In this document: positions 19,695-64,000 of the stretch, piece after piece
Layout of the letters: each line of letters opens with the position of its first letter
Position numbering within the stretch: position 1 is the stretch's first letter
DNA from: Macrostomum lignano
Lineage: Eukaryota
Reading direction: 5' to 3'
Length of the DNA stretch: 64,000 bases
Assembly: GCA_002269645.1 (NCBI GenBank)
Contig: NIVC01002766.1
Span: forward strand, 62,001 to 126,000
Notes under the pieces: model-generated
Told to the model about the DNA's origin: nothing
What the model saw: the letters and a program-made list of their open reading frames with translations, nothing else
Database searches by the model: none
Position numbers and translations under genes: made by a program

Positions 19695-22600
19695 TTTCAA
19701 ATCAGCCGGATCGGTAGCCTCTCAATCAGCTGGATCGGTAGCCTCTCAATCAGCTGGATCGGTAGCCTCTCAATCAGCTGGATCGGTAGCCTCTCAATCA
19801 GCTGGATCGGTAGCCTCTCAATCAGCTGGATCGGTAGCCTCTCAATCAGCTGGATCGGTAGCCTCTCAATCAGCTGGATCGGTAGCCTCTCCAATCAGCT
19901 GGATCGGTAGCCTCTCAATCAGCTGGATCGGTAGCCTCTCCAATCAGCTGGATCGGTAGCCTCTCCAATCAGCTAGATCGGTAGCCTCTCCAATCAGCTG
20001 GATCCGTAGCCTCTCCAATCAGCTGGATCGGTAGCCTCTCCAATCAGCTGGATCGGTAGCCTCTCCAATCAGCTAGATCGGTAGCCTCTCTAATCAGCTA
20101 GATTGGTAGCCTCTCCAATCAGCTGGATCGGTAGCCTCTCCAACCAGCTGGATCGGTAGCCTCTCCAACCAGCTGGATCGGTAGCCTCTCCAACCAGCTG
20201 GATCGGTAGCCTCTCCAATCAGCTGGATCGGTAGCCTCTCCAATCAGCTAGATCGGTAGCCTCTCCAATCAGCTAGATCGGTAGCCTCTCCAATCAGCTG
20301 GATCGGTAGCCTCTCCAATCAGCTAGATCGGTAGCCTCTCCAATCAGCTGGATCGGTAGCCTCTCCAATCAGCTGGATCGGTAGCCTCTCCAATCAGCTG
20401 GATCAGTAGCCTCTCCAATCAGCTGGATCGGTAGCCTTTCCAATCAGCTAGATCGGTAGCCTCTCCAATCAGCTAGATCGGTAGCCTCTCCAATCAGCTA
20501 GATCGGTAGCCTCTCCAATCAGCTAGATCGGTAGCCTCTCCAATCAGCTGGATCGGTAGCCTCTCCAATCAGCTGGATCGGTAGCCTCTCCAACCAGCTG
20601 GATCGGTAGCCTCTCCAACCAGCTGGATCGGTAGCCTCTCCAATCAGCTGGATCGGTAGCCTCTCCAATCAGCTGGATCGGTAGCCTCTCCAATCAGCTG
20701 GATCGGTAGCCTCTCCAATCAGCTGGATCGGTAGTCTCTCCAATCAGCTGGATCGGTAGCCTCTCCAATCAGCTAGATCGGTAGCCTCTCCAATCAGCTG
20801 GATCGATAGCCTCTCCAATCAGCTGGATCGGTAGCCTCTCCAATCAGCTGGATTGGTAGCCTCTCCAATCAGCTGGATCGATAGCCTCTCCAATCAGCTG
20901 GATTGGTAGCCTCTCCAATCAGCTGGATCGGTAGCCTCTCCAATCAGCTGGATCGATAGCCTCTCCAATCAGCTGGATCGGTAGCCTCTCCAATCAGCTG
21001 GATCGGTAGCCTCTCCAATCAGCTGGATCGATAGCCTCTCCAATCAGCTGGATCGGTAGCCTCTCCAATCAGCTAGATCGGTAGCCTCTCCAATCAGCTG
21101 GATCGATAGCCTCTCCAATCAGCTGGATCGGTAGCCTCTCCAATCAGCTGGATTGGTAGCCTCTCCAATCAGCTGGATCGGTAGCCTCTCCAACCAGCTG
21201 GATCGGTAGCCTCTCCAACCAGCTGGATCGGTAGCCTCTCCAACCAGCTGGATCGGTAGCCTCTCCAATCAGCTAGATCGGTAGCCTCTCCAATCAGCTG
21301 GATCGGTAGCCTCTCCAATCAGCTGGATCGGTAGCCTCTCCAATCAGCTGGATCGGTAGCCTCTCCAATCAGCTGGATCGGTAGCCTCTCCAATCAGCTG
21401 GATCGGTAGCCTCTCCAATCAGCTGGATCGGTAGCCTCTCCAATCAGCTGGATTGGTAGCCTCTCCAATCAGCTGGATCGGTAGCCTCTCCAATCAGCTA
21501 GATCGGTAGCCTCTCCAATCAGCTAGATCGGTAGCCTCTCCAATCAGCTGGATCGATAGCCTCTCCAATCAGCTGGATCGGTAGCCTCTCCAATCAGCTG
21601 GATTGGTAGCCTCTCCAATCAGCTGGATCGATAGCCTCTCCAATCAGCTGGATCGGTAGCCTCTCTAATCAGCTAGATCGGTAGCCTCTCCAATCAGCTG
21701 GATCGATAGCCTCTCCAATCAGCTGGATCGGTAGCCTTTCCAATCAGCTGGATCGGTAGCCTCTCCAATCAGCTGGATCGGTAGCCTCTCCAATCAGCTG
21801 GATCGGTAGCCTCTCCAATCAGCTGGATCGGTAGCCTCTCCAATCAGCTGGATCGGTAGCCTCTCCAATCAGCTGGATCGGTAGCCTCTCCAATCAGCTG
21901 GATCGGTAGCCTCTCCAATCAGCTGGATCGGTAGCCTCTCCAATCAGCTGGATCGGTAGCCTCTCCAATCAGCTGGATCGGTAGCCTCTCCAATTAGCTG
22001 GATCGGTAGCCTCTCCAATCAGCTGGATCGGTAGCCTCTCCAACCAGCTGGATCGGTAGCCTCTCAATCAGCTGGATCGGTAGCCTCTCCAATCAGCTGG
22101 ATCGGTAGCCTCTCCAATCAGCTGGATCGGTAGCCTCTCCAATCAGCTGGATCGATAGCCTCTCCAATCAGCTGAATCGGTAGCCTCTCCAATCAGCTGG
22201 ATCGGTAGCCTCTCCAATCAGCTGGATCGGTAGCCTCTCCAATCAGCTGGATCGGTAGCCTCTCCAATCAGCTGGATCGGTAGCCTCTCCAATCAGCTGG
22301 ATCGGTAGCCTCTCCAATCAGCTAGATCGATAGCCTCTCCAACCAGCTGGATCGGTAGCCTCTCTAATCAGCTGGATCGGTAGCCTCTCGAATCAGCTAG
22401 ATCGGTAGCCTCTCCAATCAGCTGGATCGGTAGCCTCTCCAATCAGCTGGATCGGTAGCCTCTCGAATCAGCTGGATCGGTAGCCTCTCCAATCAGCTGG
22501 ATCGATAGCCTCTCCAATCAGCTGGATCGGTAGCCTCTCCAATCAGCTGGATCGGTAGCCTCTCCAATCAGCTGGATCGATAGCCTCTCCAATCAGCTGG

Positions 22601-22910
22601 ATCGGTAGCCTCTCCAATCAGCTGGATCGGTAGCCTCTCCAATCAGCTGGATCGATAGCCTCTCCAATCAGCTGGATCGGTAGACTCTCCAATCAGCTGG
22701 ATCGGTAGCCTCTCCAATCAGCTGGATCGGTAGCCTCTCCAATCAGCTGGATCGGTAGCCTCTCCAATCAGCTAGATCGGTAGCCTCTCCAATCAGCTAG
22801 ATCGATAGCCTCTCCAATCAGCTAGATCGGTAGCCTCTCCAATCAGCTGGATCGGTAGCCTCTCCAATCAGCTGGATCGGTAGCCTCTCCAATCAGCTAG
22901 ATCGATAGCC
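19695..22910. repeat. 25-bp minisatellite (CAATCAGCTGGATCGGTAGCCTCTC), about 128 units; the leftmost units are 24 bp
   Basis: Direct reading; array ends about 25 nt from the exon 2 donor. Confidence 0.97.
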
Positions 22911-24450: not shown

Positions 24451-25655
24451 GGGAGATGAGGGGGATCGAGAGGGAGATGAGGGGGATCGAGAGGGAGATG
24501 AGGGGGATCGAGAGGGAGATGAGGGGGATCGAGAGGGAGATGAGGGGGATCGAGAGGGAGATGAGGGGGATCGAGAGGGAGATGAGGGGGGTCGAGAGGG
24601 AGATGAGGGGGATCGAGAGGGAGATGAGGGGGATCGAGAGGGAGATGAGGGGGATCGAGAGGGAGATGAGGGGGATCGAGAGGGAGATGAGGGGGATCGA
24701 GAGGGAGATGAGGGGGATCGAGAGGGAGATGAGGGGGATCGAGAGGGAGATGAGGGGGATCGAGAGGGAGATGAGGGGGATCGAGAGGGAGATGAGGGGG
24801 ATCGAGAGGGAGATGAGGGGGATCGAGAGGGAGATGAGGGGGATCGAGAGGGAGATGAGGGGGATCGAGAGGGAGATGAGGGGGATCGAGAGGGAGATGA
24901 GGGGGATCGAGAGGGAGATGAGGGGGATCGAGAGGGAGATGAGGGGGATCGAGAGGGAGATGAGGGGGATCGAGAGGGAGATGAGGGGGATCGAGAGGGA
25001 GATGAGGGGGATCGAGAGGGAGATGAGGGGGATCGAGAGGGAGATGAGGGGGATCGAGAGGGAGATGAGGGAGATCGAGAGGGAGATGAGGGGGATCGAG
25101 AGGGAGATGAGGGGGATCGAGAGGGAGATGAGGGGGATCGAGAGGGAGATGAGGGGGATCGAGAGGGAGATGAGGGGGATCGAGAGGGAGATGAGGGGGA
25201 TCGAGAGGGAGATGAGGGGGATCGAGAGGGAGATGAGGGGGATCGAGAGGGAGATGAGGGGGATCGAGAGGGAGATGAGGGGGGTCGAGAGGGAGATGAG
25301 GGGGATCGAGAGGGAGATGAGGGGGATCGAGAGGGAGATGAGGGGGATCGAGAGGGAGATGAGGGGATCGAGAGGGAGATGAGGGGGATCGAGAGGGAGA
25401 TGAGGGGGATCGAGAGGGAGATGAGGGGATCGAGAGGGAGATGAGGGGGATCGAGAGGGAGATGAGGGGATCGAGAGGAAGATGAGGGGGATCGAGAGGG
25501 AGATGAGGGGGATCGAGAGGGAGATGAGGGGGATCGAGAGGGAGATGAGGGGGATCGAGAGGGAGATGAGGGGGATCGAGAGGGAGATGAGGGGGATCGA
25601 GAGGGAGATGAGGGGGATCGAGAGGGAGATGAGGGGGATCGAGAGGGAAATGAGG
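24451..25655. repeat. 21-bp purine-rich minisatellite (GAGGGAGATGAGGGGGATCGA)
   Basis: About 57 units. Confidence 0.97.
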
Positions 25656-26159
25656 GGACAGGGAAAGGATGGGGAGAGGAGGGAGAGGAGAGGGAGAAGG
25701 GAGAGGAGGGGAGAAGGGAGAGGAGAGTTCAGATGGGAAAGGGAGAAGAGAAGAGGATCGGAGAAGTGGGGAGAAGAGGAACTGGGAGAAATGTCAGGTA
25801 CATGGAAAAGATTGAGATGGGCAAACTACAAGCGTGCATATGGGATGAAGCAAGCGTCAGACTGTGCATGGATTATGCACACAAAGCATCTGCAGCAGGC
25901 TGCATAGACTGAGTAAACCCTCCGCATTCCGGATAAAGAAATGCAAATAAAAAGAGCTGTATGATGAGACAGGGTCAGGAACTGCGGCAAAGGCATGGCG
26001 GGTTAGTGGGAGAAACCAGCTGAGAACATCGGGACATGCAAGACAAGGCTAAACGCAATCAGAGAACATGGAAGCCACTTGTAGCGCATTGCAATCAGAT
26101 TATGCTTGTGGCTATAGATGCAGGACAGCCTGCAACAGTGCAGTATACTCGTATAATCC

Positions 26160-30119: not shown

Positions 30120-30659
30120 TCACCTGTCGGTTTTATCCGCCCCAGTAGCACCAGAAGAATCCGCCGACACAAGCGCCATAGCGGCAGTATAAACGCTAGT
30201 AAAAGAATAGCCTTCAGCTCCGAGCATGTGGCTATCGTCTAGAAAGTACTCAATGTACTTTAAATGGCAGAGCAGAGCCGGCTGGCCGGAGGTGGCCACA
30301 ACGAATGCCAGCACGGGCACCAGATCGTCGGCGCCGATTTCGCCGGCCCCGACGGCCGATCGCATCGCCGCTAAGGCGCTGTTCAGAGTGTCCTGCAACA
30401 GTTGGCACTTTGCCAAAGGCGTACCAGGCGAGGCGCACAGTCGGCGCAGTAGGTCGCGCGATTCCGACAACGGCGCTAAATCGGTTGTTAAACTGTCGAA
30501 TCTTTGACCGACGCCGCACAGTTTAGCAACGGATTCTAACTGAGAGGAGACCTGACAGTCTGCCTGTTTGTCCCCTGCTACTTCGATCATGACAGCGGCC
30601 AGTCTGCTGAGATGAGGCCGCAGTACGATGGCCAGTCGGGCCAGGGCGCACGACTCCAC
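30120..30659 (-). CDS. VPS9D1: VPS9D1-like, C-terminal VPS9 domain (downstream of a frame break near 30660)
   Basis: PGTPLAKCQLL...IGADDLVPVLAFVVATSG...KYIEYFL...GAEGYSFTS carries the VPS9 GADD motif; TGA at 30120-30122. Confidence 0.82.
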   Translation of the reverse strand: MESCALARLAIVLRPHLSRLAAVMIEVAGDKQADCQVSSQLESVAKLCGVGQRFDSLTTDLAPLSESRDLLRRLCASPGTPLAKCQLLQDTLNSALAAMRSAVGAGEIGADDLVPVLAFVVATSGQPALLCHLKYIEYFLDDSHMLGAEGYSFTSVYTAAMALVSADSSGATGADKTDR

Positions 30660-31117
30660 CCGGGGGAGAGCAGGCGGCCAGACAGCAGCGCGGAGCACGC
30701 GGCCACCTCGTGACTGGCTAATCCGCCATCGCTGCCGCCGCCGCCGCAGAGAAGACAGGCGGCCGGAGCCAGCCGACGCAACAGACGACAGGCGACGCGG
30801 CCGACTCTGGCTGAGGAATCGTCGCGATCGGCGTCAAGCAGCAGACTGTCCGTCAGGCTCAATAGTTCAACGTCGGGAGCCTCGACAGAGTCGGCAGGGG
30901 TTGGCGGCGCTACGGACAGCCGATTGGCCAGCCGGTCGGAGAATGCGGCAATAAAAGCAGCCAGTGGGTGGTCGGGAATGGACAGCACGTACTGCAGGCG
31001 GGCAGGCGGCTGGCCGGCGGATTTCTGGTACAGCTGATCCCGGTACAGCACCAGGTAGTCGAACTCGCTGCACCGGCAGTACAGGGTGCGCAGCTCGGCG
31101 GCATCGATGGCCTTTTC
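30660..31117 (-). CDS. VPS9D1: VPS9D1-like exon 2, 5' part
   Basis: EKAIDAAELRTLYCRCSEFD...DHPLAAFI...LLSPGW resembles VPS9D1 EQRALYAAILEYE, HPIAQLL and FFSPLW; phase-0 acceptor CCTTCAAG|GAA; boundary at 30660 approximate. Confidence 0.7.
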
Positions 31118-31135
31118 CTTGAAGGGGGTGGGGGC

Positions 31136-31720
31136 ACTGAATCTTATCGCCTCTGACACCGAATCTGATCGCCTCTGACACCGAATCTGATCGCCTCTGA
31201 CACTGAATCTTATCGCCTCTGACACCGAATCTTATCGCCTCTGACACTGAATCTTATCGCCTCTGACACTGAATCTTATCGCCTCTGACACTGAATCTTA
31301 TCGCCTCTGACACCGAATCTTATCGCCTCTGACAACGAATCTTATCGCCTCTGACACCGAATCTCAGCACACTTGACACCGAATCTTATCGTCTCTGACA
31401 CCGAATCTCAGCACACCTGACACCAAATCTTATGACACCTGACACCGAATCTCAGCACACCTGACACCGAATCTGATCACACCTGACACCGAAGCTCATC
31501 ACACCTGACACCGAATCTGATCACACCTGGCACCGAATCTCATCACACCTGACACCGAATCTCATCACACCTGACACCGAAGCTCATCACACCTGACACC
31601 GAATCTGATCACACCTGACACCGAATCTGATCACACCTGACACCGAATCTCATCACACCTGACACCGAATCTGATCACACATGACACCGAATCTCATCAC
31701 ACCTGACACCGAATCTTATC
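31136..31720. repeat. 22-bp minisatellite (CTGACACCGAATCTTATCGCCT, shifting to ...CTCATCACAC) filling the VPS9D1 intron
   Basis: Direct reading; two subtypes along the array. Confidence 0.93.
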
Positions 31721-31785
31721 CTAGCAATAATTATCAAACACTGACTGACACAAAGGAAAATATCACAGAATCCTTAAAGCCAAAC

Positions 31786-32457
31786 CTCATCAGACTCCAC
31801 AGGTCCGTCATCATATTCGAATACCTCCGTATGCAGCTGAAACAGGCGGCTACAGTCGGTCCGTTTAGCCAGCAGATCATCCTGCAGAGCCTGTTCAAAA
31901 GCCGCCTGTTTCGGCTTAGCCAACTGCAAATTCTCTTCTATTCGGCGTTGCAAAGCCAGGTGTAAATTAACCCGGCGTGGGTCACCTTTGGGCAGGGCGC
32001 TGGTCCTAGCCAGATGGGCGCTGTAGAGCCGCCTGTTCAGCTCCATCGCTTCTTGCATGGGGGATTTACGCGGGCCAAGATAGGCTGGAGCTGGAGGAAT
32101 TGGAGAAGAGGCAGTACCCGCAAACTGCGCCGGAGTCTGGGCCGCTGCTTGATGAGGCGGCGGCTTACCCGGTTGCTGGGGTGTCCGATTATTCATACCA
32201 GGAGGGGCGGCATTTAATAACGCGTCGCTTCGTTCTAAACACAATTTCATCAATCGCATCAACTTCCGCTGCTCATCCAACTGTTGAGCTGATAATTGAG
32301 CAACTGGGACAGCCTGAGAGGCGGCAGCAGCAGCTGAAGCAACAGCCGCAGCCAGGACCTGCTGCATGCAGGCTAAATAAGGGAAATAGCATCGTTCGCT
32401 TTGGCCTTGTTCGTCCTGACGGAGAACGTCTAGGACTGCCGTCACGGCCGTCTGTGA
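31786..32457 (-). CDS. VPS9D1: VPS9D1-like exon 1; begins at a phase-0 acceptor with no ATG
   Basis: LMRLMKLCLERS and KSPMQEAMELNRRL...LHLALQRRIEENLQLAK match VPS9D1 MLKLAQQCLERA and LSPMEEASLQNQKL...LTLSLQRQMMENLVIAK; acceptor GCTGCAG|TCA, donor GAG|GTTTGG; 224 codons. Confidence 0.82.
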
Positions 32458-32574
32458 CTGCAGCGGAATTTTTTAATCAAATCAAAATTTGCGGTATAAT
32501 AAGTTATTCTTTTACGCCAATAATAGTTCCAATCCAAAGAGCACTGCATCTTGAGAACCTTTCCGGGAGTCAAT

Positions 32575-33955
32575 CATCTAGATAAACTTTCCTAGAAACC
32601 GTTATGTAGATAAACTTTCCTAGAATCTGTCATCTAGAAAACTTTTCCTAGAATCAGTCATCTAGAGACCTTTTCCTAGAATCTGTCATCTAGAGAACTT
32701 TTCCTAGAATCAGTCATCTAGAGAACTTTTCCTAGAATCTGTCATCTAGAGAACTTTTCCTAGAATCAGTCATCTGGAGAACTTTTCCTAGAGTCAGTCA
32801 TCTAGAGAACTTTTCCTAGAATCAGTCATCTGGAGAACTTTTCCTAGAATCAGTCATCTAGAGAACTTTTCCTAGAATCAGTCATCTGGAGAACTTTTCC
32901 TAGAATCAGTCATCTAGAGAACTTTTCCTAGAATCTGTCATCTAGAAAACTTTTCCTAGAATCAGTCATCTAGAGACCTTTTCCTAGAATCTGTCATCTA
33001 GAGAACTTTTCCTAGAATCAGTCATCTAGAGAACTTTTCCTAGAATCAGTCATCTAGAGAACTTTTCCTAGAATCAGTCATCTGGAGAACTTTTCCTAGA
33101 ATCAGTCATCTAGAAAACTTTTCCTAGAATCAGTCATCTAGAGACCTTTTCCTAGAATCTGTCATCTAGAGAACTTTTCCTAGAATCAGTCATCTAGAGA
33201 ACTTTTCCTAGAATCTGTCATCTAGAGAACTTTTCCTAGAATCAGTCATCTGGAGAACTTTTCCTAGAGTCAGTCATCTAGAGAACTTTTCCTAGAATCA
33301 GTCATCTGGAGAACTTTTCCTAGAATCAGTCATCTAGAGAACTTTTCCTAGAATCAGTCATCTGGAGAACTTTTCCTAGAATCAGTCATCTAGAGAACTT
33401 TTCCTAGAATCTGTCATCTAGAAAACTTTTCCTAGAATCAGTCATCTAGAGACCTTTTCCTAGAATCTGTCATCTAGAGAACTTTTCCTAGAATCAGTCA
33501 TCTAGAGAACTTTTCCTAGAATCAGTCATCTAGAGAACTTTTCCTAGAATCAGTCATCTAGAGAATCTTTCCTAGAATCAGTCATCTAGAGACCTTTTCC
33601 TAGAATCTGTCATCTAGAGAATCTTTCCTAGAATCAGTCATCTAGAGACCTTTTCCTAGAATCTGTCATCTAGAGAATCTTTCCTAGAATCAGTCATCTA
33701 GAGACCTTTTCCTAGAATCTGTCATCTAGAGAATCTTTCCTAGAATCAGTCATCTAGAGACCTTTTCCTATAATCAATCATCTAGAGAATTCTTTCCTAG
33801 AATCAATAATCTAGAGAACCTTTCCTAGAATCCATCATCTAGAACTTTTCCTAGAATCCACCATCTAGAGAATTCTTTCCTAGAATCAGTAATCTAAAGA
33901 ACTTTTCCTAGAATCAATCATCTAGAAAATCATTCCAAGAATCTGTCATCTATAC
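32575..33955. repeat. 28-bp minisatellite (TCTAGAGAACTTTTCCTAGAATCAGTCA) between RPL13 and VPS9D1
   Basis: About 48 units with recurring variant blocks. Confidence 0.96.
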
Positions 33956-34207
33956 AACCATTCCTAGAATCAATAAAGAACATTTCTCAGAATTCCTAGA
34001 AAAAAACATTTTAGAAACTTTCGTATTTCCGCATAACAGAAAAAAAAACTAGAAAGACTTGACATTTTTAATCCATCAATCAAATTGGGCACGCGCAAGT
34101 GTATTTAACGGTGTCAATTTTATTCAAGTTGTTAGTTAAGCTTTTAACGCACAAAGGGAGAAACAGCCACCATTAGATCAGCTATATAGCTCAGCTTAGT
34201 TAACTCA

Positions 34208-34831
34208 TCACTTCTTCTCCTTCTCAGCCTGCTCGGCTTTCTTCTTGCGCAGTCCGTCGAGCCGCTTGTTCGCCCGAGCCTGTCGGATAGCGTGGAAGGC
34301 GTGGAACTTCTTGTCGTCCTCCGATTGGACGCGAGCCTTCACGCGGCGCAGTCGGCGGCCCGGAGCCACCACAGGCGGCAGCGGACGCTGTACAACAGAC
34401 CGAAGTTCCTCCTCCGAAGCTTCGCCAGCCTTCGGCGCCTTGGGATTCTTCGGGAATAGGATCAGCTTGCCGCGGTAGGCCTTCAATCGCTGGGCATTGC
34501 GCTGCAGACTCTCGGCTGAGCGATTCTTGCGCCGATGATCAACGGCGATGCCGATGGTTTGGGCGAGTCGGCGATTGATGCCGGCGGCCTTGAGCTCGTC
34601 CAGGCTGAAGCCGCGGCCGGGGCGGACACGCATGTTGTACCTGATGGTCTGGCAGCGGACCACCGGGCGAAGAGGCCCGTTCACTGGCCGGGGCGCTATA
34701 AGGCGCGCCTTCTCGACGCGAGCTTTACGACGGCGCTCCTTGCGAGCGGGCTGGTTGAACCAGGTGCGAACAAAGCGCTGCCAGTCCTTGTGGAAGTGGG
34801 CATTCGGTATGATGTTCTTGCGCTTCACCAT
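34208..34831 (-). CDS. RPL13: 60S ribosomal protein eL13, 207 aa (true ATG 34831, not the ORF-track start 34873)
   Basis: [35 protein letters not shown]...[10 protein letters not shown]; acceptor TTTTCCAG 14 nt upstream; AATAAA on minus strand at 34119-34124. Confidence 0.97.
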
Positions 34832-36479
34832 GGCGACCGGAACTGCTGGAAAATCTGCAATTGCAAAAGTCAAACTTTGTTATTACTATGAGTAGGTTGA
34901 CTGGATTATTTGTTTTTTTATTGAAGAAGTTAGATCTAAACTATTAGTTAGAGGACTCAAATGGGGACCTTTGACCAACATTTCTGAGCTAAAGGATATT
35001 GATGCTATTCAAACAAATTTCTACAAATACCTTTTCAACCTCCCAAAGCATCTTAGCAATAGTATCATTTAAGCTGAGCTCAGCATCTTGCCAATTTCCT
35101 ACACCAGATCCATAAAGCTTTTTAAATTTATTTGGTTAAAACTAAGACACAAAAACACTATCAACACCCCCATTGAACTCTGAAGCAAACACAAGCTCAC
35201 AAAATCTATGGAAAACTAATAATGTAACTGAAATACTACATGGCATCAATTTGGAATGCATGACCACAATGAACCCAGACAAAAAATCTCTGTTTTACAT
35301 TACCTTCCCACTCCTAAATCTTATTTACATGCCAGAAAATTCCAACATATAACATATGTGTAAAATGGTTAGCATAAAGGGGTGATAGTCATTTTGTCAA
35401 CTGGCGTTTTGTCAACTTAGTTGACAAAGTGACCAAAGTGTTGGGGCAACTTTATTGGTAGTTAACAAAATGACCAATGCCTAGGTCTCCCCTATTTGCT
35501 TATTGACAAAGTGACCAAAATTTTACTATATGAATGATATAGCTGATATAACTGCATAATCTTGTAGCTGACAATAATTATTGTATCTATTACATTGTTT
35601 TAATAATTACCTTATTTTACATAAACAATGATCAAAAATTGCAATGGATTTGCTATTAATATTACTGCAATACTACATCATATATGTGTCATCCATATGA
35701 TGATGACAACTTGAACAAATCTCGAAGACTTAAACATTTAAATATGACAACTTTGACCAAAGGCAAGGGTGTATTAATTTTGGATTTTTCTACCTTCGGG
35801 CAAAAATCCCTTGCATATGCACCCGTAATTTTTATATTAACTGTGTCAATTAATGCTGATTCACCCCTGATTGCTGCATCAGCGATCAGGGTCGGCATTG
35901 CGTTCGTGCAAATTAATCCGGAGAAATTGCGCAGACGAATCACAACGAAATTTTCTTTCTCCTGCTTACTCCAACAGCCGGGTTCTCAAGTCTAATAAAT
36001 CTAATAAAACTATAAAATAAAACTAACAAGTCTAAAGTGTGCAAAACTAATAAATAAATTTAAACTAAACTGTCGAACACAAAAGGAAAAAGGCAAGAAA
36101 AAGAAAAAGGAAAAGGGGGTTGAAAATTAGGCGGCACATCAAGACAGTATAAATATTAAAAAAAGGAGGTTACAATCAACGGGTGGGGGTGCCGCTGGAC
36201 ACACTACTGGACCAAAAATCCCATGCGTGGAGACTACCGATGGAATGGCTCACAGGTTACATGCAAGCAACAAAATTAAAACAAAAGTTTTGACCAAGAT
36301 TTGACCAAGACCTACTTTTCCAACCAAAGGAAGAATAGAACAATTTCTGGAACCTCCAGTCAATGGAAATGTGACAAAAATTGAACAATGAGCGGACAAA
36401 AATTAAACGTTTGTAGCAGTTTTCCTTTTAAATGAGTTATTAAAGTAATGGTTATTAGCCTGATTGCAGCGCATGGGCA

Positions 36480-52726: not shown

Positions 52727-52789
52727 CTGGAGATGTTGGGGATTTTGTTGAATTGAGTTGTGGGAGTATGAGTGCTTTGAATATTCTGA

Positions 52790-55672
52790 GCTGCACAATG
52801 GGGATATTCCAAACTACACAATGGGATATTCCAAGCTACACAATGGGATATTCTAAGCTACACAATGGGATATTCCAAGCTACACAATGGGATATTCTAA
52901 GCTACACAATGGGATATTCCAAACTACACAATGGGATATTCCAAGCTACACAATGGGATATTCCAAGCTACACAATGGGATATTCCAAGCTACACAATGG
53001 GATATTCCAAGCTACACAATGGGATATTCTAAGCTACACAATGGGATATTCTAAGCTACACCATGGGATATTCCAAGCTACACAATGGGATATTCTAAGC
53101 TACACAATGGGATATTCTAAGCTACACAATGGGATATTCCAAGCTACACAATGGGGATATTCTAAGCTACACAATGGGATATTCCAAGCTACACAATGAA
53201 GATATTCCAAACTACACAATGGGATATTCCAAGCTACACAATGGGATATTCCAAGCTACACAATGGGATATTCGAAGCTACACAATGGGATATTCCAAGC
53301 TACACAATGGGATATTCCAAGCTACACAATGAAGATATTCCAAGCTACACAATGAAGATATTCCAAGCTACACAATGGGATATTCCAAGCTACACAATGG
53401 GATATTCCAAGCTACACAATGGGATATTCCAAGCTACACAATGAAGATATTCCAAGCTACACAATGAAGATATTCCAAGCTACACAATGGGATATTCCAA
53501 GCTACACAATGGGATATTCCAAGCTACACAATGGGATATTCCAAGCTACACAATGGGATATTCCAAGCTACACAATGGGATATTCCAAGCTACACAATGG
53601 GATATTCCAAGCTACACAATGGGATATTCCGAGCTACACAATGGGATATTCCAAGCTACACAATGGGATATTCCAAGCTACACAATGGGATATTCCAAGC
53701 TACACAATGAAGATATTCCAAGCTACACAATGAAGATATTCCAAGCTACACAATGGGATATTCCAAGCTACACAATGGGATATTCCAAGCTACACAATGG
53801 GATATTCCAAGCTACACAATGGGATATTCCAAGCTACACAATGGGATATTCCAAGCTACACAATGGGATATTCCAAGCTACACAATGGGATATTCTAAGC
53901 TACACAATGGGATATTCCAAACTACACAATGGGATATTCCAAGCTACACAATGGGATATTCCAAGCTACACAATGGGATATTCCAAGCTACACAATGGGA
54001 TATTCCAAGCTACACAATGGGATATTCTAAGCTACACAATGGGATATTCTAAGCTACACAATGGGATATTCCAAGCTACACAATGAAGATATTCCAAGCT
54101 ACACAATGGGATATTCCAAGCTACACAATGGGATATTCCAAGCTACACAATGGGATATTCCAAGCTACACAATGGGATATTCCAAGCTACACAATGGGAT
54201 ATTCCAAGCTACACAATGGGATATTCCAAGCTACACAATGGGATATTCCAAGCTACACAATGGGATATTCCAAGCTACACAATGGGATATTCCAAGCTAC
54301 ACAATGGGATATTCTAAGCTACACAATGGGATATTCCAAACTACACAATGGGATATTCCAAGCTACACAATGGGATATTCCAAGCTACACAATGGGATAT
54401 TCCAAGCTACACAATGGGATATTCCAAGCTACACAATGGGATATTCCAAGCTACACAATGGGATATTCTAAGCTACACAATGGGATATTCTAAGCTACAC
54501 AATGGGATATTCTAAGCTACACAATGGGATATTCTAAGCTACACAATGGGATATTCCAAGCTACACAATGGGGATATTCTAAGCTACACAATGGGATATT
54601 CCAAGCTACACAATGAAGATATTCCAAACTACACAATGGGATATTCCAAGCTACACAATGGGATATTCCAAGCTACACAATGGTTATATTCCAAGCTACA
54701 CAATGGGATATTCCAAGCTACACAATGGGATATTCCAAGCTACACAATGGGATATTCCAAGCTACACAATGGGATATTCCAAGCTACACAATGGGATATT
54801 CCAAGCTACACAATGAAGATATTCCAAGCTACACAATGGGATATTCCAAGCTACACAATGGGATATTCCAAGCTACACAATGGGATATTCCGAAGCTACA
54901 CAATGGGATATTCCAAGCTACACAATGAAGATATTCCAAGCTACACAATGAAGATATTCCAAGCTACACAATGGGATATTCCAAGCTACACAATGGGATA
55001 TTCTAAGCTACACAATGGGATATTCCAAACTACACAATGGGATATTCCAAGCTACACAATGGGATATTCCAAGCTACACAATGGGATATTCCAAGCTACA
55101 CAATGGGATATTCCAAGCTACACAATGGGATATTCTAAGCTACACAATGGGATATTCTAAGCTACACAATGGGATATTCCAAGCTACACAATGGGATATT
55201 CTAAGCTACACAATGGGATATTCTAAGCTACACAATGGGATATTCCAAGCTACACAATGGGGATATTCTAAGCTACACAATGGGATATTCCAAGCTACAC
55301 AATGGATATTCCAAGCTACACAATGGGATATTCCAAGCTACACAATGGGATATTCCAAGCTACACAATGGTTATATTCCAAGCTACACAATGGGATATTC
55401 CAAACTACACAATGGGATATTCCAAGCTACACAATGGGATATTCCAAGCTACACAATGGGATATTCCAAGCTACACAATGGGATATTCCAAGCTACACAA
55501 TGAAGATATTCCAAGCTACACAATGGGATATTCCAAGCTACACAATGGGATATTCCAAGCTACACAATGGGATATTCCAAGCTACACAATGGGATATTCC
55601 AAGCTACACAATGAGATATTCCAAACTACACAATGGGATATTCCAAACTACACAATGGGATATTCCAAACTA
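52790..55672. repeat. 22-bp minisatellite (GGGATATTCCAAGCTACACAAT)
   Basis: About 130 units; runs to within about 10 nt of the exon 5 donor. Confidence 0.97.
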
Positions 55673-55681
55673 CAAGCTCAC

Positions 55682-61816: not shown

Positions 61817-62149
61817 CTGTAATTCGAATCCAGAATCCTGAGCCATCAGGCACTCCCAATTAACCAGTTCAACAATTCGAACCCGATAGAACGCGTCCAG
61901 GAACTCTTCGATAGCCGCAAATCGAGCCATTGGCGTATCGATTGCAGCCGTTTGGGGCGCCGGAGCCGCGCAACAGCCGAGACTGACGCAGAGGTCGCGC
62001 AATAAGCGACCATCGGCCAAGTCTGACTCTGTTGGCGGTCTGTTGCCCTTGCCAGTGGAGGGAGAAACAGTGCCGGATAATAGCTGGCCAATCCAGGCCA
62101 ACAGGCAGGACCGCCTAGCGGGGTCTACTGGGGCGGTGGTGTCCTCGTC
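61817..62149 (-). CDS. NUMA1: NuMA-like first coding exon seen (N-terminal hook/CH-like domain); start either ATG 62158 or supplied by splicing at 62149
   Basis: RRSCLLAWIGQL...DLADGRLL resembles NuMA RGAALLSWVNSL...QLQDCSIF; donor CAG|GTAAGA; 111 codons; ten exons sum to 4470 nt in frame. Confidence 0.8.
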
Positions 62150-64000
62150 CTGAAGCATTTTACAGTGTGATTAAGCTGAAGCAGGATGGGATCCCCAGTC
62201 CTGAAGCATTTTACAGTGTAATTAAGCCCAGGTAAGATGGGATCCCCAGTCCTGAAGCATTTTACAGTGTCATTAAGCTGAGGCAATATCGGATCCCCAG
62301 TCCTGAAGCATTTTACAGTGTGATTAAGCTGAAGCAGGATGGGATCCCCAGTCCTGAAGCATTTTACAGTGTGATTAAGCTGAGGTAGGATGGGATCCCA
62401 GTCCTGAAGCATTTTACACTGTGATTAAGCTGAAGCAGGATGATATCCCCAGTCCTGAAGCATTTTACAGTGTGATTAAGCTGAGGTAGGATGGGATCCC
62501 CAGTCCTGAAGCATTTTACAGTGTGATTAAGCTGAAGCAGGATGGGATCCTCAGTCCTGAAGCATTTTACAGTGTGATTAAGCTGAGGCAATATGGGATC
62601 CCCAGTTCTGAAGCATTTTACAGTGTGATTAAGCTGAAGCAGGATGGGATCCCCAGTCCTGAAGCATTTTACAGTGTGATTAAGCTGAGGTAGGATGGGA
62701 TCCCCAGTCCTGAAGCATTTTACAGTGTGATTAAGCTGAGGCAATATTGGATCCCCAGTCCTGAAGCATTTTACAGTGTGATTAAGCTGAGGCAATATGG
62801 GATCCCCAGTTCTGAAGCATTTTACAGTGTGATTAAGCTGAAGCAGGATGGGATCCCCAGTCCTGAAGCATTTTACAGTGTGATTAAGCTGAGGTAGGAT
62901 GGGATCCCCAGTCCTGAAGCATTTTACAGTGTGATTAAGCTGAGGTAGGATGGGATCCCCAGTCCTGAAGCATTTTACAGTGTGATTAAGCTGAGGCAAT
63001 ATTGGATCCCCAGTCCTGAAGCATTTTACAGTGTGATTAAGATGAGGTAGAATGGGATCCCCAGTCCTGAAGCATTTTACAGTGTGATTTAGCTGAGGCA
63101 ATATCGGATCCCCAGTCCTGAAGCATTTTACAGTGTGATTAAGCTGAAGCAGGATGGGATCCCCAGTCCTGAAGCATTTTACAGTGTCATTAAGCTGAGG
63201 CAATATTGGATCCCCAGTTCTGAAGCATTTTACAGTGTGATTAAGCTGAGGTAGGATGGGATCCCCAGTCCTGAAGCATTTTACAGTGTGATTAAGCTGA
63301 GGTAGGATGGGATCCCCAGTCCTGAGGCATTTTACAGTGTCATTAAGCTGAGGTAGGATGGGATCCCCAGTCCTGAAGCATTTTACAGTGTAATTAAGCC
63401 CAGGTAAGATGGGATCCCCAGTCCTGAAGCATTTTACAGTGTCATTAAGCTGAGGCAATATCGGATCCCCAGTCCTGAAGCATTTTACAGTGTGATTAAG
63501 CTGAGGTAGGATGGGATCCCCAGTCCTGAAGCATTTTACAGTGTGATTAAGCTGAGGTAGGATGGGATCCCCAGTCCTGAAGCATTTTACAGTGTGATTA
63601 AGCTGAGGCAATATTGGATCCCCAGTCCTGAAGCATTTTACAGTGTGATTAAGCTGAGGCAATATGGGATCCCCAGTTCTGAAGCATTTTACAGTGTGAT
63701 TAAGCTGAAGCAGGATGGGATCCCCAGTCTTGAAGCATTTTACAGTGTGATTAAGCTGAGGTAGGATGGGATCCCTAGTCCTGAAGCATTTTACAGTGTG
63801 ATTAAGCTGAGGCAATATTGGATCCCCAGTCCTGAAGCATTTTACAGTGTGATTAAGCTGAGGTAGGATGGGATCCCCAGTCCTGAAGCATTTTACAGTG
63901 TGATTAAGCTGAGGTAGGATGGGATCCCCAGTCCTGAAGCATTTTACAGTGTAATTAAGCCCAGGTAAGATGGGATCCCCAGTCCTGAAGCATTTTACAG
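62150..64000. repeat. 51-bp minisatellite abutting the NUMA1 5' end, about 36 units, continues off the right edge
   Basis: Unit CCTGAAGCATTTTACAGTGTGATTAAGCTGAGGTAGGATGGGATCCCCAGT; period 51 (62149 to 62200). Confidence 0.97.

What the first reader, a model, noticed from the sequence alone, without database searches (positions are those of the whole stretch)
32340..32460. VPS9D1 lacks its own start codon: leader-donated AUG candidate
The ORF opens at a phase-0 acceptor (GCTGCAG|TCA CAG ACG GCC GTG). It is homologous to the extreme VPS9D1 N-terminus (VLRQDEQGQSERCY versus AIELDTGNRPREAY), yet the first in-frame ATG is about 30 codons later. I found no ATG-bearing phase-0 donor exon in the unique sequence between here and RPL13. 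An SL ending in AUG gives MSQTAVTAVLDV directly, making translation dependent on trans-splicing.
Basis: partly seen in the sequence, partly recalled or inferred. Interest (0 to 1): 0.75.

Follow-up and report, generated by a model that had tools for sequence, protein, structure and literature searches.

The report
Spliced-leader AUG likely starts flatworm VPS9D1
In this Macrostomum lignano (flatworm) window, the VPS9D1-like gene has no start codon of its own at its conserved N-terminus and most likely takes its AUG from the trans-spliced leader; this mechanism has been known in flatworms since 2006, so the case is real but ordinary.

Summary
The window is contig NIVC01002766.1 of Macrostomum lignano. 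The first coding exon of a VPS9D1-like gene opens at CTGCAG|TCACAG, with its first base at 32457. An in-frame TAA lies six codons upstream. The first in-frame ATG (32367) is codon 31.

Orthologues begin only three residues before this point. Four of the six invariant residues of the N-terminal domain lie before Met31. So does helix 1 of a confidently predicted three-helix, MIT-like bundle.

The published M. lignano spliced leader ends in ATG. The site matches the published trans-acceptor motif [T/C]TNCAG. Joining the leader here gives an open frame that reads MSQTAVTAVLDV…

The gene lies downstream of RPL13 on the same strand, about 325 nt away once a 1.4-kb minisatellite is subtracted, which is operon-like. 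Transcript-based GenBank models of two intact sister copies are 5'-partial, start within 3 nt of the acceptor and show no upstream exon.

No RNA reads could be examined, so trans-splicing at this site is inferred, not shown. Leader-donated initiator AUGs are established in flatworms (Cheng et al. 2006), so this is a new member of a known kind and mainly an annotation fix. The window's own copy also carries a 1-nt frameshift further downstream.

The parts
32458..32463 (-). Predicted SL trans-splice acceptor CTGCAG (AG at 32459-32458), preceded by an A/T-rich tract
   Evidence: Sequence. It matches [T/C]TNCAG, the top motif at M. lignano trans-acceptors (PMC8629364). It is identical in the sister copies L001 and L002.
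31786..32457 (-). VPS9D1-like coding exon 1 (SQTAVTAVLDV...ESDE), which encodes the N-terminal MIT-like three-helix bundle. The donor is GAG|GTTTGG.
   Evidence: tblastn of PAA62346.1. Homologues. AlphaFold2 model with pLDDT 84, helices at residues 2-16, 24-47 and 57-83. Top Foldseek hits are MIT domains.
32473..32475 (-). In-frame TAA six codons upstream of the acceptor. It closes the frame in any unspliced RNA.
32443..32445 (-). In-frame GTG (codon 5), a candidate near-cognate start with G at -3 and A at +4
32390..32392 (-). Out-of-frame ATG with A at -3. It opens a 39-codon ORF that runs across the Met31 ATG.
32365..32367 (-). First in-frame ATG (codon 31), in a weak context (T at -3, C at +4), in the middle of predicted helix 2
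32547..33972 (.). 28-nt minisatellite (50.9 copies) that fills the RPL13-VPS9D1 spacer. The sister loci carry 34.9 and 19.9 copies.
34208..34831 (-). RPL13 coding sequence (single exon, 207 aa plus stop), the upstream gene of the putative operon. It has its own AUG in the strong context gccATGg.
34119..34124 (-). AATAAA polyadenylation signal of RPL13, about 85 nt after its stop codon
   Evidence: sequence
31118..31785 (-). Intron 1 of VPS9D1 (668 nt). 586 nt of it is a 22-nt minisatellite at 31135-31720.
30120..31117 (-). VPS9D1 exon 2, carrying the VPS9 domain and the stop codon. In this window's copy it is interrupted by a 1-nt deletion in a C-run (30662-30666, C5 against C6 in the sister copies).
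   Evidence: Pfam VPS9, E 7e-15. tblastn frame change. Alignment A1.

Best explanation
The gene is the Macrostomum lignano orthologue of VPS9D1, with an N-terminal MIT-like bundle and a C-terminal VPS9 domain. It is the downstream member of an RPL13-VPS9D1 gene pair, which is probably transcribed as one precursor. Inferred steps: the precursor is cut by polyadenylation of RPL13 and by trans-splicing of the 35-nt spliced leader onto the acceptor CTGCAG|TCACAG (first exon base 32457). The leader ends in AUG, and that AUG falls in frame directly before Ser-Gln-Thr-Ala-Val. It would be the first AUG on the mature mRNA (nt 33-35) and would start the full-length protein MSQTAVTAVLDV... RNA that has not been trans-spliced has no in-frame AUG before codon 31, so full-length protein would depend on trans-splicing. 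Shown here: the sequence anatomy, the homology, the fold prediction, the species identity and the published SL sequence. Inferred: that this acceptor is used for trans-splicing, and that the SL AUG is the codon the ribosome uses.
For: - Species and leader. P0001 is 100% identical and is M. lignano. The window is NIVC01002766.1. The SL ends in ATG and 30% of genes are trans-spliced (PMC8629364). PMC10468722 notes that the terminal ATG is probably a start codon.
- Frame. The frame is open from the acceptor and closed by a TAA six codons upstream, with no in-frame ATG before codon 31. Of all AG sites in 32380-32560, only 32457 carries the motif and gives the full ORF. The AG 6 nt downstream (32451) is also in frame.
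- The N-terminus is complete at this point. Orthologues start 3 to about 10 residues upstream of the SL-Met position. Invariant residues D15, Y24, Y27 and L28 precede Met31. Helix 1 spans residues 2-16 at pLDDT about 88-90, and Met31 lies inside helix 2.
- Met31 is disfavoured under scanning. An out-of-frame AUG with A at -3 precedes it, and its ORF overlaps Met31.
- Operon-like setting. RPL13 is on the same strand. The distance from its stop to the acceptor is 1,750 nt, of which 1,426 nt is minisatellite, leaving about 325 nt of unique sequence. This is below the 1-kb repeat-adjusted operon threshold of PMC8629364. The RPL13-VPS9D1 arrangement is the same in three copies.
- Transcript-based GenBank models PAA62346.1 and PAA72661.1 are 5'-partial. 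They begin QSQTAV..., 3 nt upstream of the junction, and have no upstream exon. Another model simply starts at Met31 (P0014).
- Precedent. Flatworm SL AUGs serve as initiator Met (Cheng et al. 2006, as cited in PMC9851317, PMC12582326, PMC5832876 and PMC7653826).
Against: - No SL-containing read, cDNA or peptide for this gene could be examined.
- The GenBank CDS starts 3 nt upstream of the predicted junction, not exactly at it. The RPL13 models, by contrast, fit exact AG| junctions. So the annotated 5' end may not come from a trans-splice peak, and an Inr-like CAGT cap site is conceivable.
- The SL AUG has a weak context (T at -3, T at +4). It must be leaky on RPL13-type mRNAs, where it would open an overlapping uORF.
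- Weak donors are used in this very gene (intron 1 is GAG|GTTTGG), so the lack of consensus donors upstream does not rigorously exclude a cis mini-exon.
- The three available copies are nearly identical around the site, so there is no evolutionary test of the frame.
Confidence: 0.72

Rival explanations
1. The gene has its own promoter in the short unique segment or in the minisatellite and is not trans-spliced. Translation then starts at a near-cognate codon (GTG 32445 or ACG 32451/32442), or at Met31, which would give an N-terminally truncated protein.
For: - The annotated 5' ends of the sister copies fall on CAGT, an initiator-like sequence, 3 nt upstream of the junction rather than on it.
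- A TATTATA lies about 35-41 nt upstream.
- GTG 32445 has G at -3.
- One database model (P0014) starts at Met31.
Against: - A cap at 32460 would put GTG only about 16 nt from the 5' end.
- Met31 initiation would remove helix 1, a third of helix 2 and four of six invariant residues.
- Met31 is preceded by an out-of-frame AUG in a better context.
- A longer 5'UTR would carry many repeat-borne ATGs and the 32549 uORF that overlaps the start region.
Confidence: 0.12
2. A cis-spliced upstream mini-exon supplies the ATG. One candidate is 32577-32545 (MIDSRKGSQDA, donor GCA|GTGCTC, 87-nt intron). The other is the RPL13 start codon itself (ATG|GTGAAG at 34831-34829), spliced over the whole RPL13 body; this would also give MSQTAV...
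For: - Both are phase-0 and open.
- Orthologues tolerate 3 to about 10 extra N-terminal residues.
- Non-consensus donors work in this gene (GAG|GTTTGG).
- The RPL13 AUG has an excellent context.
Against: - Neither donor matches GT[G/A]AG.
- Genome-guided, spliced-read-based models of the two intact copies show no such exon.
- No database protein begins MSQTAV or MIDSRKGSQDASQTAV.
- The GTGAAG simply encodes the conserved Val-Lys of RPL13 and is also present in the RPL13 paralogue that has no VPS9D1 downstream.
Confidence: 0.07
3. The mRNA is trans-spliced at this acceptor (or at TCACAG|ACG, 6 nt downstream), but ribosomes mostly skip the weak SL AUG. The functional product then starts elsewhere, or this copy is a decaying paralogue whose start no longer matters.
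For: - The SL AUG context is weak, and it must be bypassed on RPL13 if that mRNA is trans-spliced.
- The window's copy carries a frameshift at 30662-30666.
Against: - Here the SL AUG is in frame and is the first AUG, and no better in-frame start exists.
- The intact copies L001 and L002 have the identical 5' region.
- The frameshift sits in a homopolymer and may be an assembly error.
Confidence: 0.09

Closest known systems
Flatworm SL 3'-terminal AUG used as initiator methionine (Cheng, Cohen, Ndegwa & Davis 2006, J Biol Chem 281:733; called 'slORFs' in PMC9851317)
   Same: The leader ends in AUG. The acceptor lies directly at the first codon of the conserved ORF, in phase 0. No other in-frame AUG preserves the N-terminus.
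   Different: That work was experimental and done in Schistosoma mansoni. Here the species is the free-living basal flatworm M. lignano, and both the trans-splicing event and the use of the AUG are inferred from sequence and annotation only.
M. lignano SL trans-splicing and operons (Wudarski et al. 2017, PMC5730564; Ustyantsev & Berezikov 2021, PMC8629364)
   Same: The site has a [T/C]TNCAG acceptor. It is a conserved gene downstream of another gene on the same strand. The intergenic spacer is inflated by repeats, and the repeat-adjusted distance is below 1 kb.
   Different: Those papers do not discuss the SL AUG as a start codon. Their annotation leaves such genes as 5'-partial: PAA62346.1 and PAA72661.1 begin with Q, translated from the genomic CAG.
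VPS9D1 (VPS9 domain-containing protein 1) of other animals
   Same: It has an N-terminal three-helix MIT-like domain with the conserved D..Y..YL and C..R residues, and a C-terminal VPS9 domain.
   Different: Sequence identity in the N-terminal domain is only about 20-27%. The protein is shorter (about 555 aa) and has two exons. Orthologues encode their own AUG 3 to about 10 codons further upstream.

Membership tests
SL-donated initiator AUG (flatworm type) | The organism has an SL RNA whose leader exon ends in AUG | tested here: met
   The species is M. lignano. The published SL is ...TTTATTGCATG (PMC8629364). The SL RNA gene itself is not in this window (Rfam found nothing).
SL-donated initiator AUG (flatworm type) | [quoted passage not shown] | tested here: inconclusive
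   The CTGCAG| acceptor fits the trans-acceptor motif. No GT[G/A]AG phase-0 ATG exon lies upstream. Weak donors cannot be excluded from sequence alone.
SL-donated initiator AUG (flatworm type) | The SL AUG is in frame with the conserved ORF, with no intervening stop | tested here: met
   SL plus exon gives MSQTAV..., with 228 open codons in exon 1.
SL-donated initiator AUG (flatworm type) | No genomic in-frame AUG can encode the conserved N-terminus | tested here: met
   A TAA lies 6 codons upstream and the first ATG is codon 31. Conserved residues and helix 1 lie before it.
SL-donated initiator AUG (flatworm type) | SL-containing transcripts are observed at this junction | not testable with these tools
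   No read data are available here. The only support is indirect: transcript-based 5'-partial models begin within 3 nt of the junction.
SL-donated initiator AUG (flatworm type) | Translation actually initiates at the SL AUG | not testable with these tools
   This needs Ribo-seq, N-terminal proteomics or a reporter assay.
SL-resolved operon (M. lignano criteria of PMC8629364) | Adjacent genes on the same strand, with a repeat-adjusted intergenic distance below 1 kb | tested here: met
   RPL13 stop at 34208, acceptor at 32458, and 1,426 nt of array subtracted leaves about 325 nt. The arrangement is kept in three copies.
SL-resolved operon (M. lignano criteria of PMC8629364) | The downstream gene is trans-spliced and a polycistronic precursor exists | not testable with these tools
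   The only hint is a garbled fused RPL13::VPS9D1 gene model, P0003.
VPS9D1 | C-terminal VPS9 domain | tested here: met
   Pfam PF02204, E 6.8e-15.
VPS9D1 | N-terminal domain homologous to that of VPS9D1 in other animals | tested here: met
   phmmer hits with E 5e-8 to 1.5e-4, aligned from the N-terminus. Alignment A2. MIT-like fold (the Foldseek E-values are not significant on their own).

The most novel reading that the evidence does not exclude
The start codon of RPL13 doubles as a shared mini-exon. The phase-0 donor-like site ATG|GTGAAG (34831-34829) is cis-spliced over the whole RPL13 body onto 32457. One strong-context AUG would then serve two unrelated proteins, and the product would be the same MSQTAV... 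protein as from the leader. Trans-splicing and cis-splicing would compete for the same acceptor.
Probability: 0.03. Interest if true: 0.6.

Novelty: new member of a known kind. Interest (0 to 1): 0.3.

Why it matters
If correct, the GenBank and UniProt entries for this gene are not truncated. The entries concerned are PAA62346.1 and PAA72661.1, flagged 'partial', and A0A1I8HCE2, which starts at Met31. The real protein would be complete, with a leader-encoded Met in place of the translated 'Q'. The same fix probably applies to many M. lignano genes, because the annotation pipeline trims the leader, ATG included. In biological terms, VPS9D1 protein could then be made only from trans-spliced mRNA, so trans-splicing would act as an on/off step for the downstream gene of an RPL13 operon. 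This is a useful, testable example in a transgenic flatworm model, but it is not a new principle.

Tried and rejected
- An Rfam scan of the window at gathering thresholds found nothing. The SL sequence is absent from the window at up to 3 mismatches, so the leader gene is elsewhere.
- The look-up of encoding contigs for P0001 and P0002, the models from the older ML2 assembly, returned nothing. I could therefore not inspect the copy whose model begins VTDGRVTAV..., a possible 2-nt indel upstream of the GTG that would put the SL AUG out of frame. That assembly is error-prone and the model also has an internal frameshift, so I gave it little weight.
- I searched for Mlig015965 and VPS9D1 in full texts and in the supplements of PMC5816591 and PMC5730564, hoping to find a trans-splicing flag. 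Nothing was found.
- Cheng et al. 2006 is not held in the library. Its content is cited through four papers that quote it.
- I tested whether the GenBank annotation places all trans-spliced 5' ends 3 nt upstream of the junction, which would mean the leader ATG was retained. The RPL13 models (PVAM, AGLTM, GLTM) fit exact AG| junctions of a CCAG|CAG| tandem acceptor, so a systematic offset is not supported. The 3-nt offset at VPS9D1 remains unexplained.
- The more divergent RPL13 paralogue (L004) has no VPS9D1 downstream, so it offers no comparative test of the acceptor.
- The three RPL13-VPS9D1 copies are too similar around the site for any substitution-pattern test.

Full report
**What is there.** The feature lies on the minus strand. 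Read 5'->3' on that strand, the sequence is ...ttttgatttgattaaaaaattccgCTGCAG|TCA CAG ACG GCC GTG ACG GCA GTC CTA GAC.... The AG of the acceptor is at 32459-32458 and the first exon base is 32457.

In this frame a TAA sits six codons upstream (32475-32473). The frame then stays open for 232 codons. The first ATG is at 32367-32365, which is codon 31 counted from TCA. In-frame near-cognate codons are ACG (32451), GTG (32445) and ACG (32442).

**Organism and gene.**
- The exon-1 peptide is 100% identical to a UniProt entry of Macrostomum lignano.
- The window is contig NIVC01002766.1 of assembly Mlig_3_7, GCA_002269645.1.
- The gene has two exons: 32457-31786 and 31117-30120. Its 668-nt intron is almost entirely a 22-nt minisatellite.
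- Exon 2 carries a VPS9 domain (Pfam E 7e-15).
- An exhaustive phmmer search with the N-terminal part found animal proteins of 500-900 aa. They align from their own residues 9-23 onwards and end in VPS9 domains. This supports the identification as VPS9D1.
- RPL13 (E 2e-74) lies upstream on the same strand at 34831-34208, with an AATAAA at 34124-34119.

**Is the N-terminus really missing its AUG?**
- In alignment A2 the first residue after the acceptor falls 4 columns after the initiator Met of the three shortest orthologues. A Met placed directly before it would fall 3 columns after theirs. No long upstream exon is therefore expected.
- Four of the six invariant residues of the domain (D15, Y24, Y27, L28) lie before Met31.
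- AlphaFold2 on this alignment gives a confident three-helix bundle (mean pLDDT 84). Helix 1 spans residues 2-16, helix 2 residues 24-47 and helix 3 residues 57-83.
- The best PDB matches are MIT domains of VPS4B, spartin, calpain-7, MITD1 and katanin. The individual E-values are not significant, but the theme is consistent.
- Starting at Met31 would delete helix 1 and a third of helix 2.
- In a scanning model Met31 is also the third AUG. An out-of-frame AUG at 32392 with A at -3 comes first, and its 39-codon ORF runs across Met31.

**Can a cis exon supply the AUG?**
- I enumerated every ATG...GT phase-0 open mini-exon upstream, as far as 37000.
- Between the RPL13 stop and the acceptor there are 11 candidate ATG/donor combinations, built on six ATGs. 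None has the GT[G/A]AG donor motif that PMC8629364 reports for 65% of M. lignano junctions.
- The least implausible candidates are two. One is 32577-32545 (MIDSRKGSQDA, donor GCA|GTGCTC, 87-nt intron). The other is the RPL13 start codon itself (ATG|GTGAAG).
- Sequence alone cannot exclude them, because this gene's own intron 1 uses a non-consensus donor, GAG|GTTTGG.
- The stronger argument is transcript-based. The Mlig_3_7 annotation was built from genome-guided StringTie assemblies with boundaries set by SL and poly(A) reads (PMC5730564).
- Its models for the two intact sister copies are PAA62346.1 and PAA72661.1. Both are 5'-partial, begin QSQTAV... 3 nt upstream of the junction, and contain no upstream exon.
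- No protein in the 15-billion-sequence collection starts MSQTAV or carries an extended N-terminus.

**The leader.**
- M. lignano has a single 35-nt SL, CGGTCTCTTACTGCGAAGACTCAATTTATTGCATG. It is found on 30% of genes. The top motif at trans-acceptors is [T/C]TNCAG (PMC8629364).
- The site CTGCAG| fits this motif. Among all AGs in 32380-32560 it is the only one with the motif.
- It is one of three AGs that give a long ORF when the leader is attached. The second is TCACAG|ACG, 6 nt downstream and also in frame. The third is CGTCAG|GAC at 32415, which lies inside helix 1.
- The motif itself is frequent, about 2.2 per kb per strand, so it is only weak evidence.
- With the leader attached, the mRNA reads ...UUGC AUG UCA CAG ACG..., that is MSQTAVTAVLDV..., and the AUG occupies nt 33-35.

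**Operon context.**
- The distance from the RPL13 stop to the acceptor is 1,750 nt. Of this, 1,426 nt is a 28-nt minisatellite.
- About 325 nt of unique sequence remain. This is inside the repeat-adjusted 1-kb limit that PMC8629364 uses to call operons. That paper also notes that repeats inflate operon spacers.
- The RPL13-VPS9D1 pair occurs in three copies. Their array sizes are 50.9, 34.9 and 19.9 units, while the unique flanks are nearly identical.
- An older gene model even fuses the two genes (P0003).

**Comparison with what is known.**
- All reported flatworm SLs end in AUG (PMC12582326).
- According to PMC9851317, Cheng et al. 2006 found the SL AUG in frame in 28% of S. mansoni trans-spliced mRNAs and required by more than 40 cDNAs.
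- PMC7653826 and PMC5832876 state the same function.
- The mechanism is therefore established. This locus is a new, unannotated instance of it.

**Weak points.**
- There are no reads, so trans-splicing at this site is inferred.
- The annotated CDS begins 3 nt upstream of the junction. RPL13 models, in contrast, fit exact AG| junctions of a CCAG|CAG| tandem acceptor. The offset is unexplained. It could reflect reads that retained leader bases, or a cap site at an initiator-like CAGT.
- The SL AUG has a weak context. On RPL13 mRNA it would open a 6-7-codon uORF overlapping the real AUG, so it must be leaky there.
- The window's own copy has a 1-nt deletion in a C-run (30662-30666) that breaks exon 2. 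GenBank annotates only a 156-aa C-terminal ORF in this copy. This may be an assembly error or a decaying paralogue. The 5' region is identical in the intact copies.

**Verdict.** The mechanism is well known in flatworms, so the novelty is modest: a new member of a known kind, mainly an annotation correction and a convenient test case.

Noticed in passing
window, whole (e.g. 651-2179, 19700-22910, 24451-25657, 52781-55674, 62147-64000): About 24.8 kb of the 64-kb window (39%) consists of minisatellite arrays with periods of 15-51 nt. Each array has a different unit. Most of them fill introns or intergenic spacers between GC-rich exons.
   Followed up: partly
window 30662-30666 (minus strand): The C-run is C5 here but C6 in the sister copies L001 and L002. 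This shifts the frame of VPS9D1 exon 2. GenBank annotates only the 156-aa C-terminal ORF in this contig. It could be a real pseudogenising change or a homopolymer assembly error.
   Followed up: partly
window 32547-33972; L001 8938-9914; L002 9357-9914: The 28-nt array in the RPL13-VPS9D1 spacer has 50.9, 34.9 and 19.9 copies in the three genomic copies. The unique flanks are nearly identical, so the operon spacer is hypervariable.
   Followed up: yes
window 34832-34860 (minus strand): The RPL13 5' end shows a tandem acceptor, ttttCCAG|CAG|TTCCGGTCGCCATGG. The 5'-partial GenBank RPL13 models begin at these junctions. A leader AUG spliced here would open a 6-7-codon uORF whose TGA overlaps the RPL13 AUG, so the leader AUG must be bypassed by leaky scanning on this abundant mRNA.
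   Followed up: partly
window 34829-34831 (minus strand): The RPL13 start codon is followed by GTGAAG, a phase-0 donor-like site. If it were cis-spliced to 32457 it would encode the same MSQTAV... protein. There is no evidence that it is used.
   Followed up: no
UniProt A0A1I8JR37 (P0003) and A0A1I8FSG7 (P0002), from the older ML2 assembly: P0003 is a frameshift-ridden fusion of RPL13 and VPS9D1. P0002 begins VTDGRVTAV..., which implies an indel just upstream of the GTG in another copy or in that assembly. The DNA could not be retrieved.
   Followed up: partly
window 31783-31788 (minus strand): The donor of VPS9D1 intron 1 is GAG|GTTTGG, which departs from the species' GT[G/A]AG consensus. Weak donors are therefore functional in this genome.
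   Followed up: no
L002 17241-20498: A full-length-looking Ty3/gypsy-type retrotransposon ORF (protease, RT, RNase H, integrase; 1,085 aa) lies about 5 kb downstream of one sister copy of VPS9D1.
   Followed up: no
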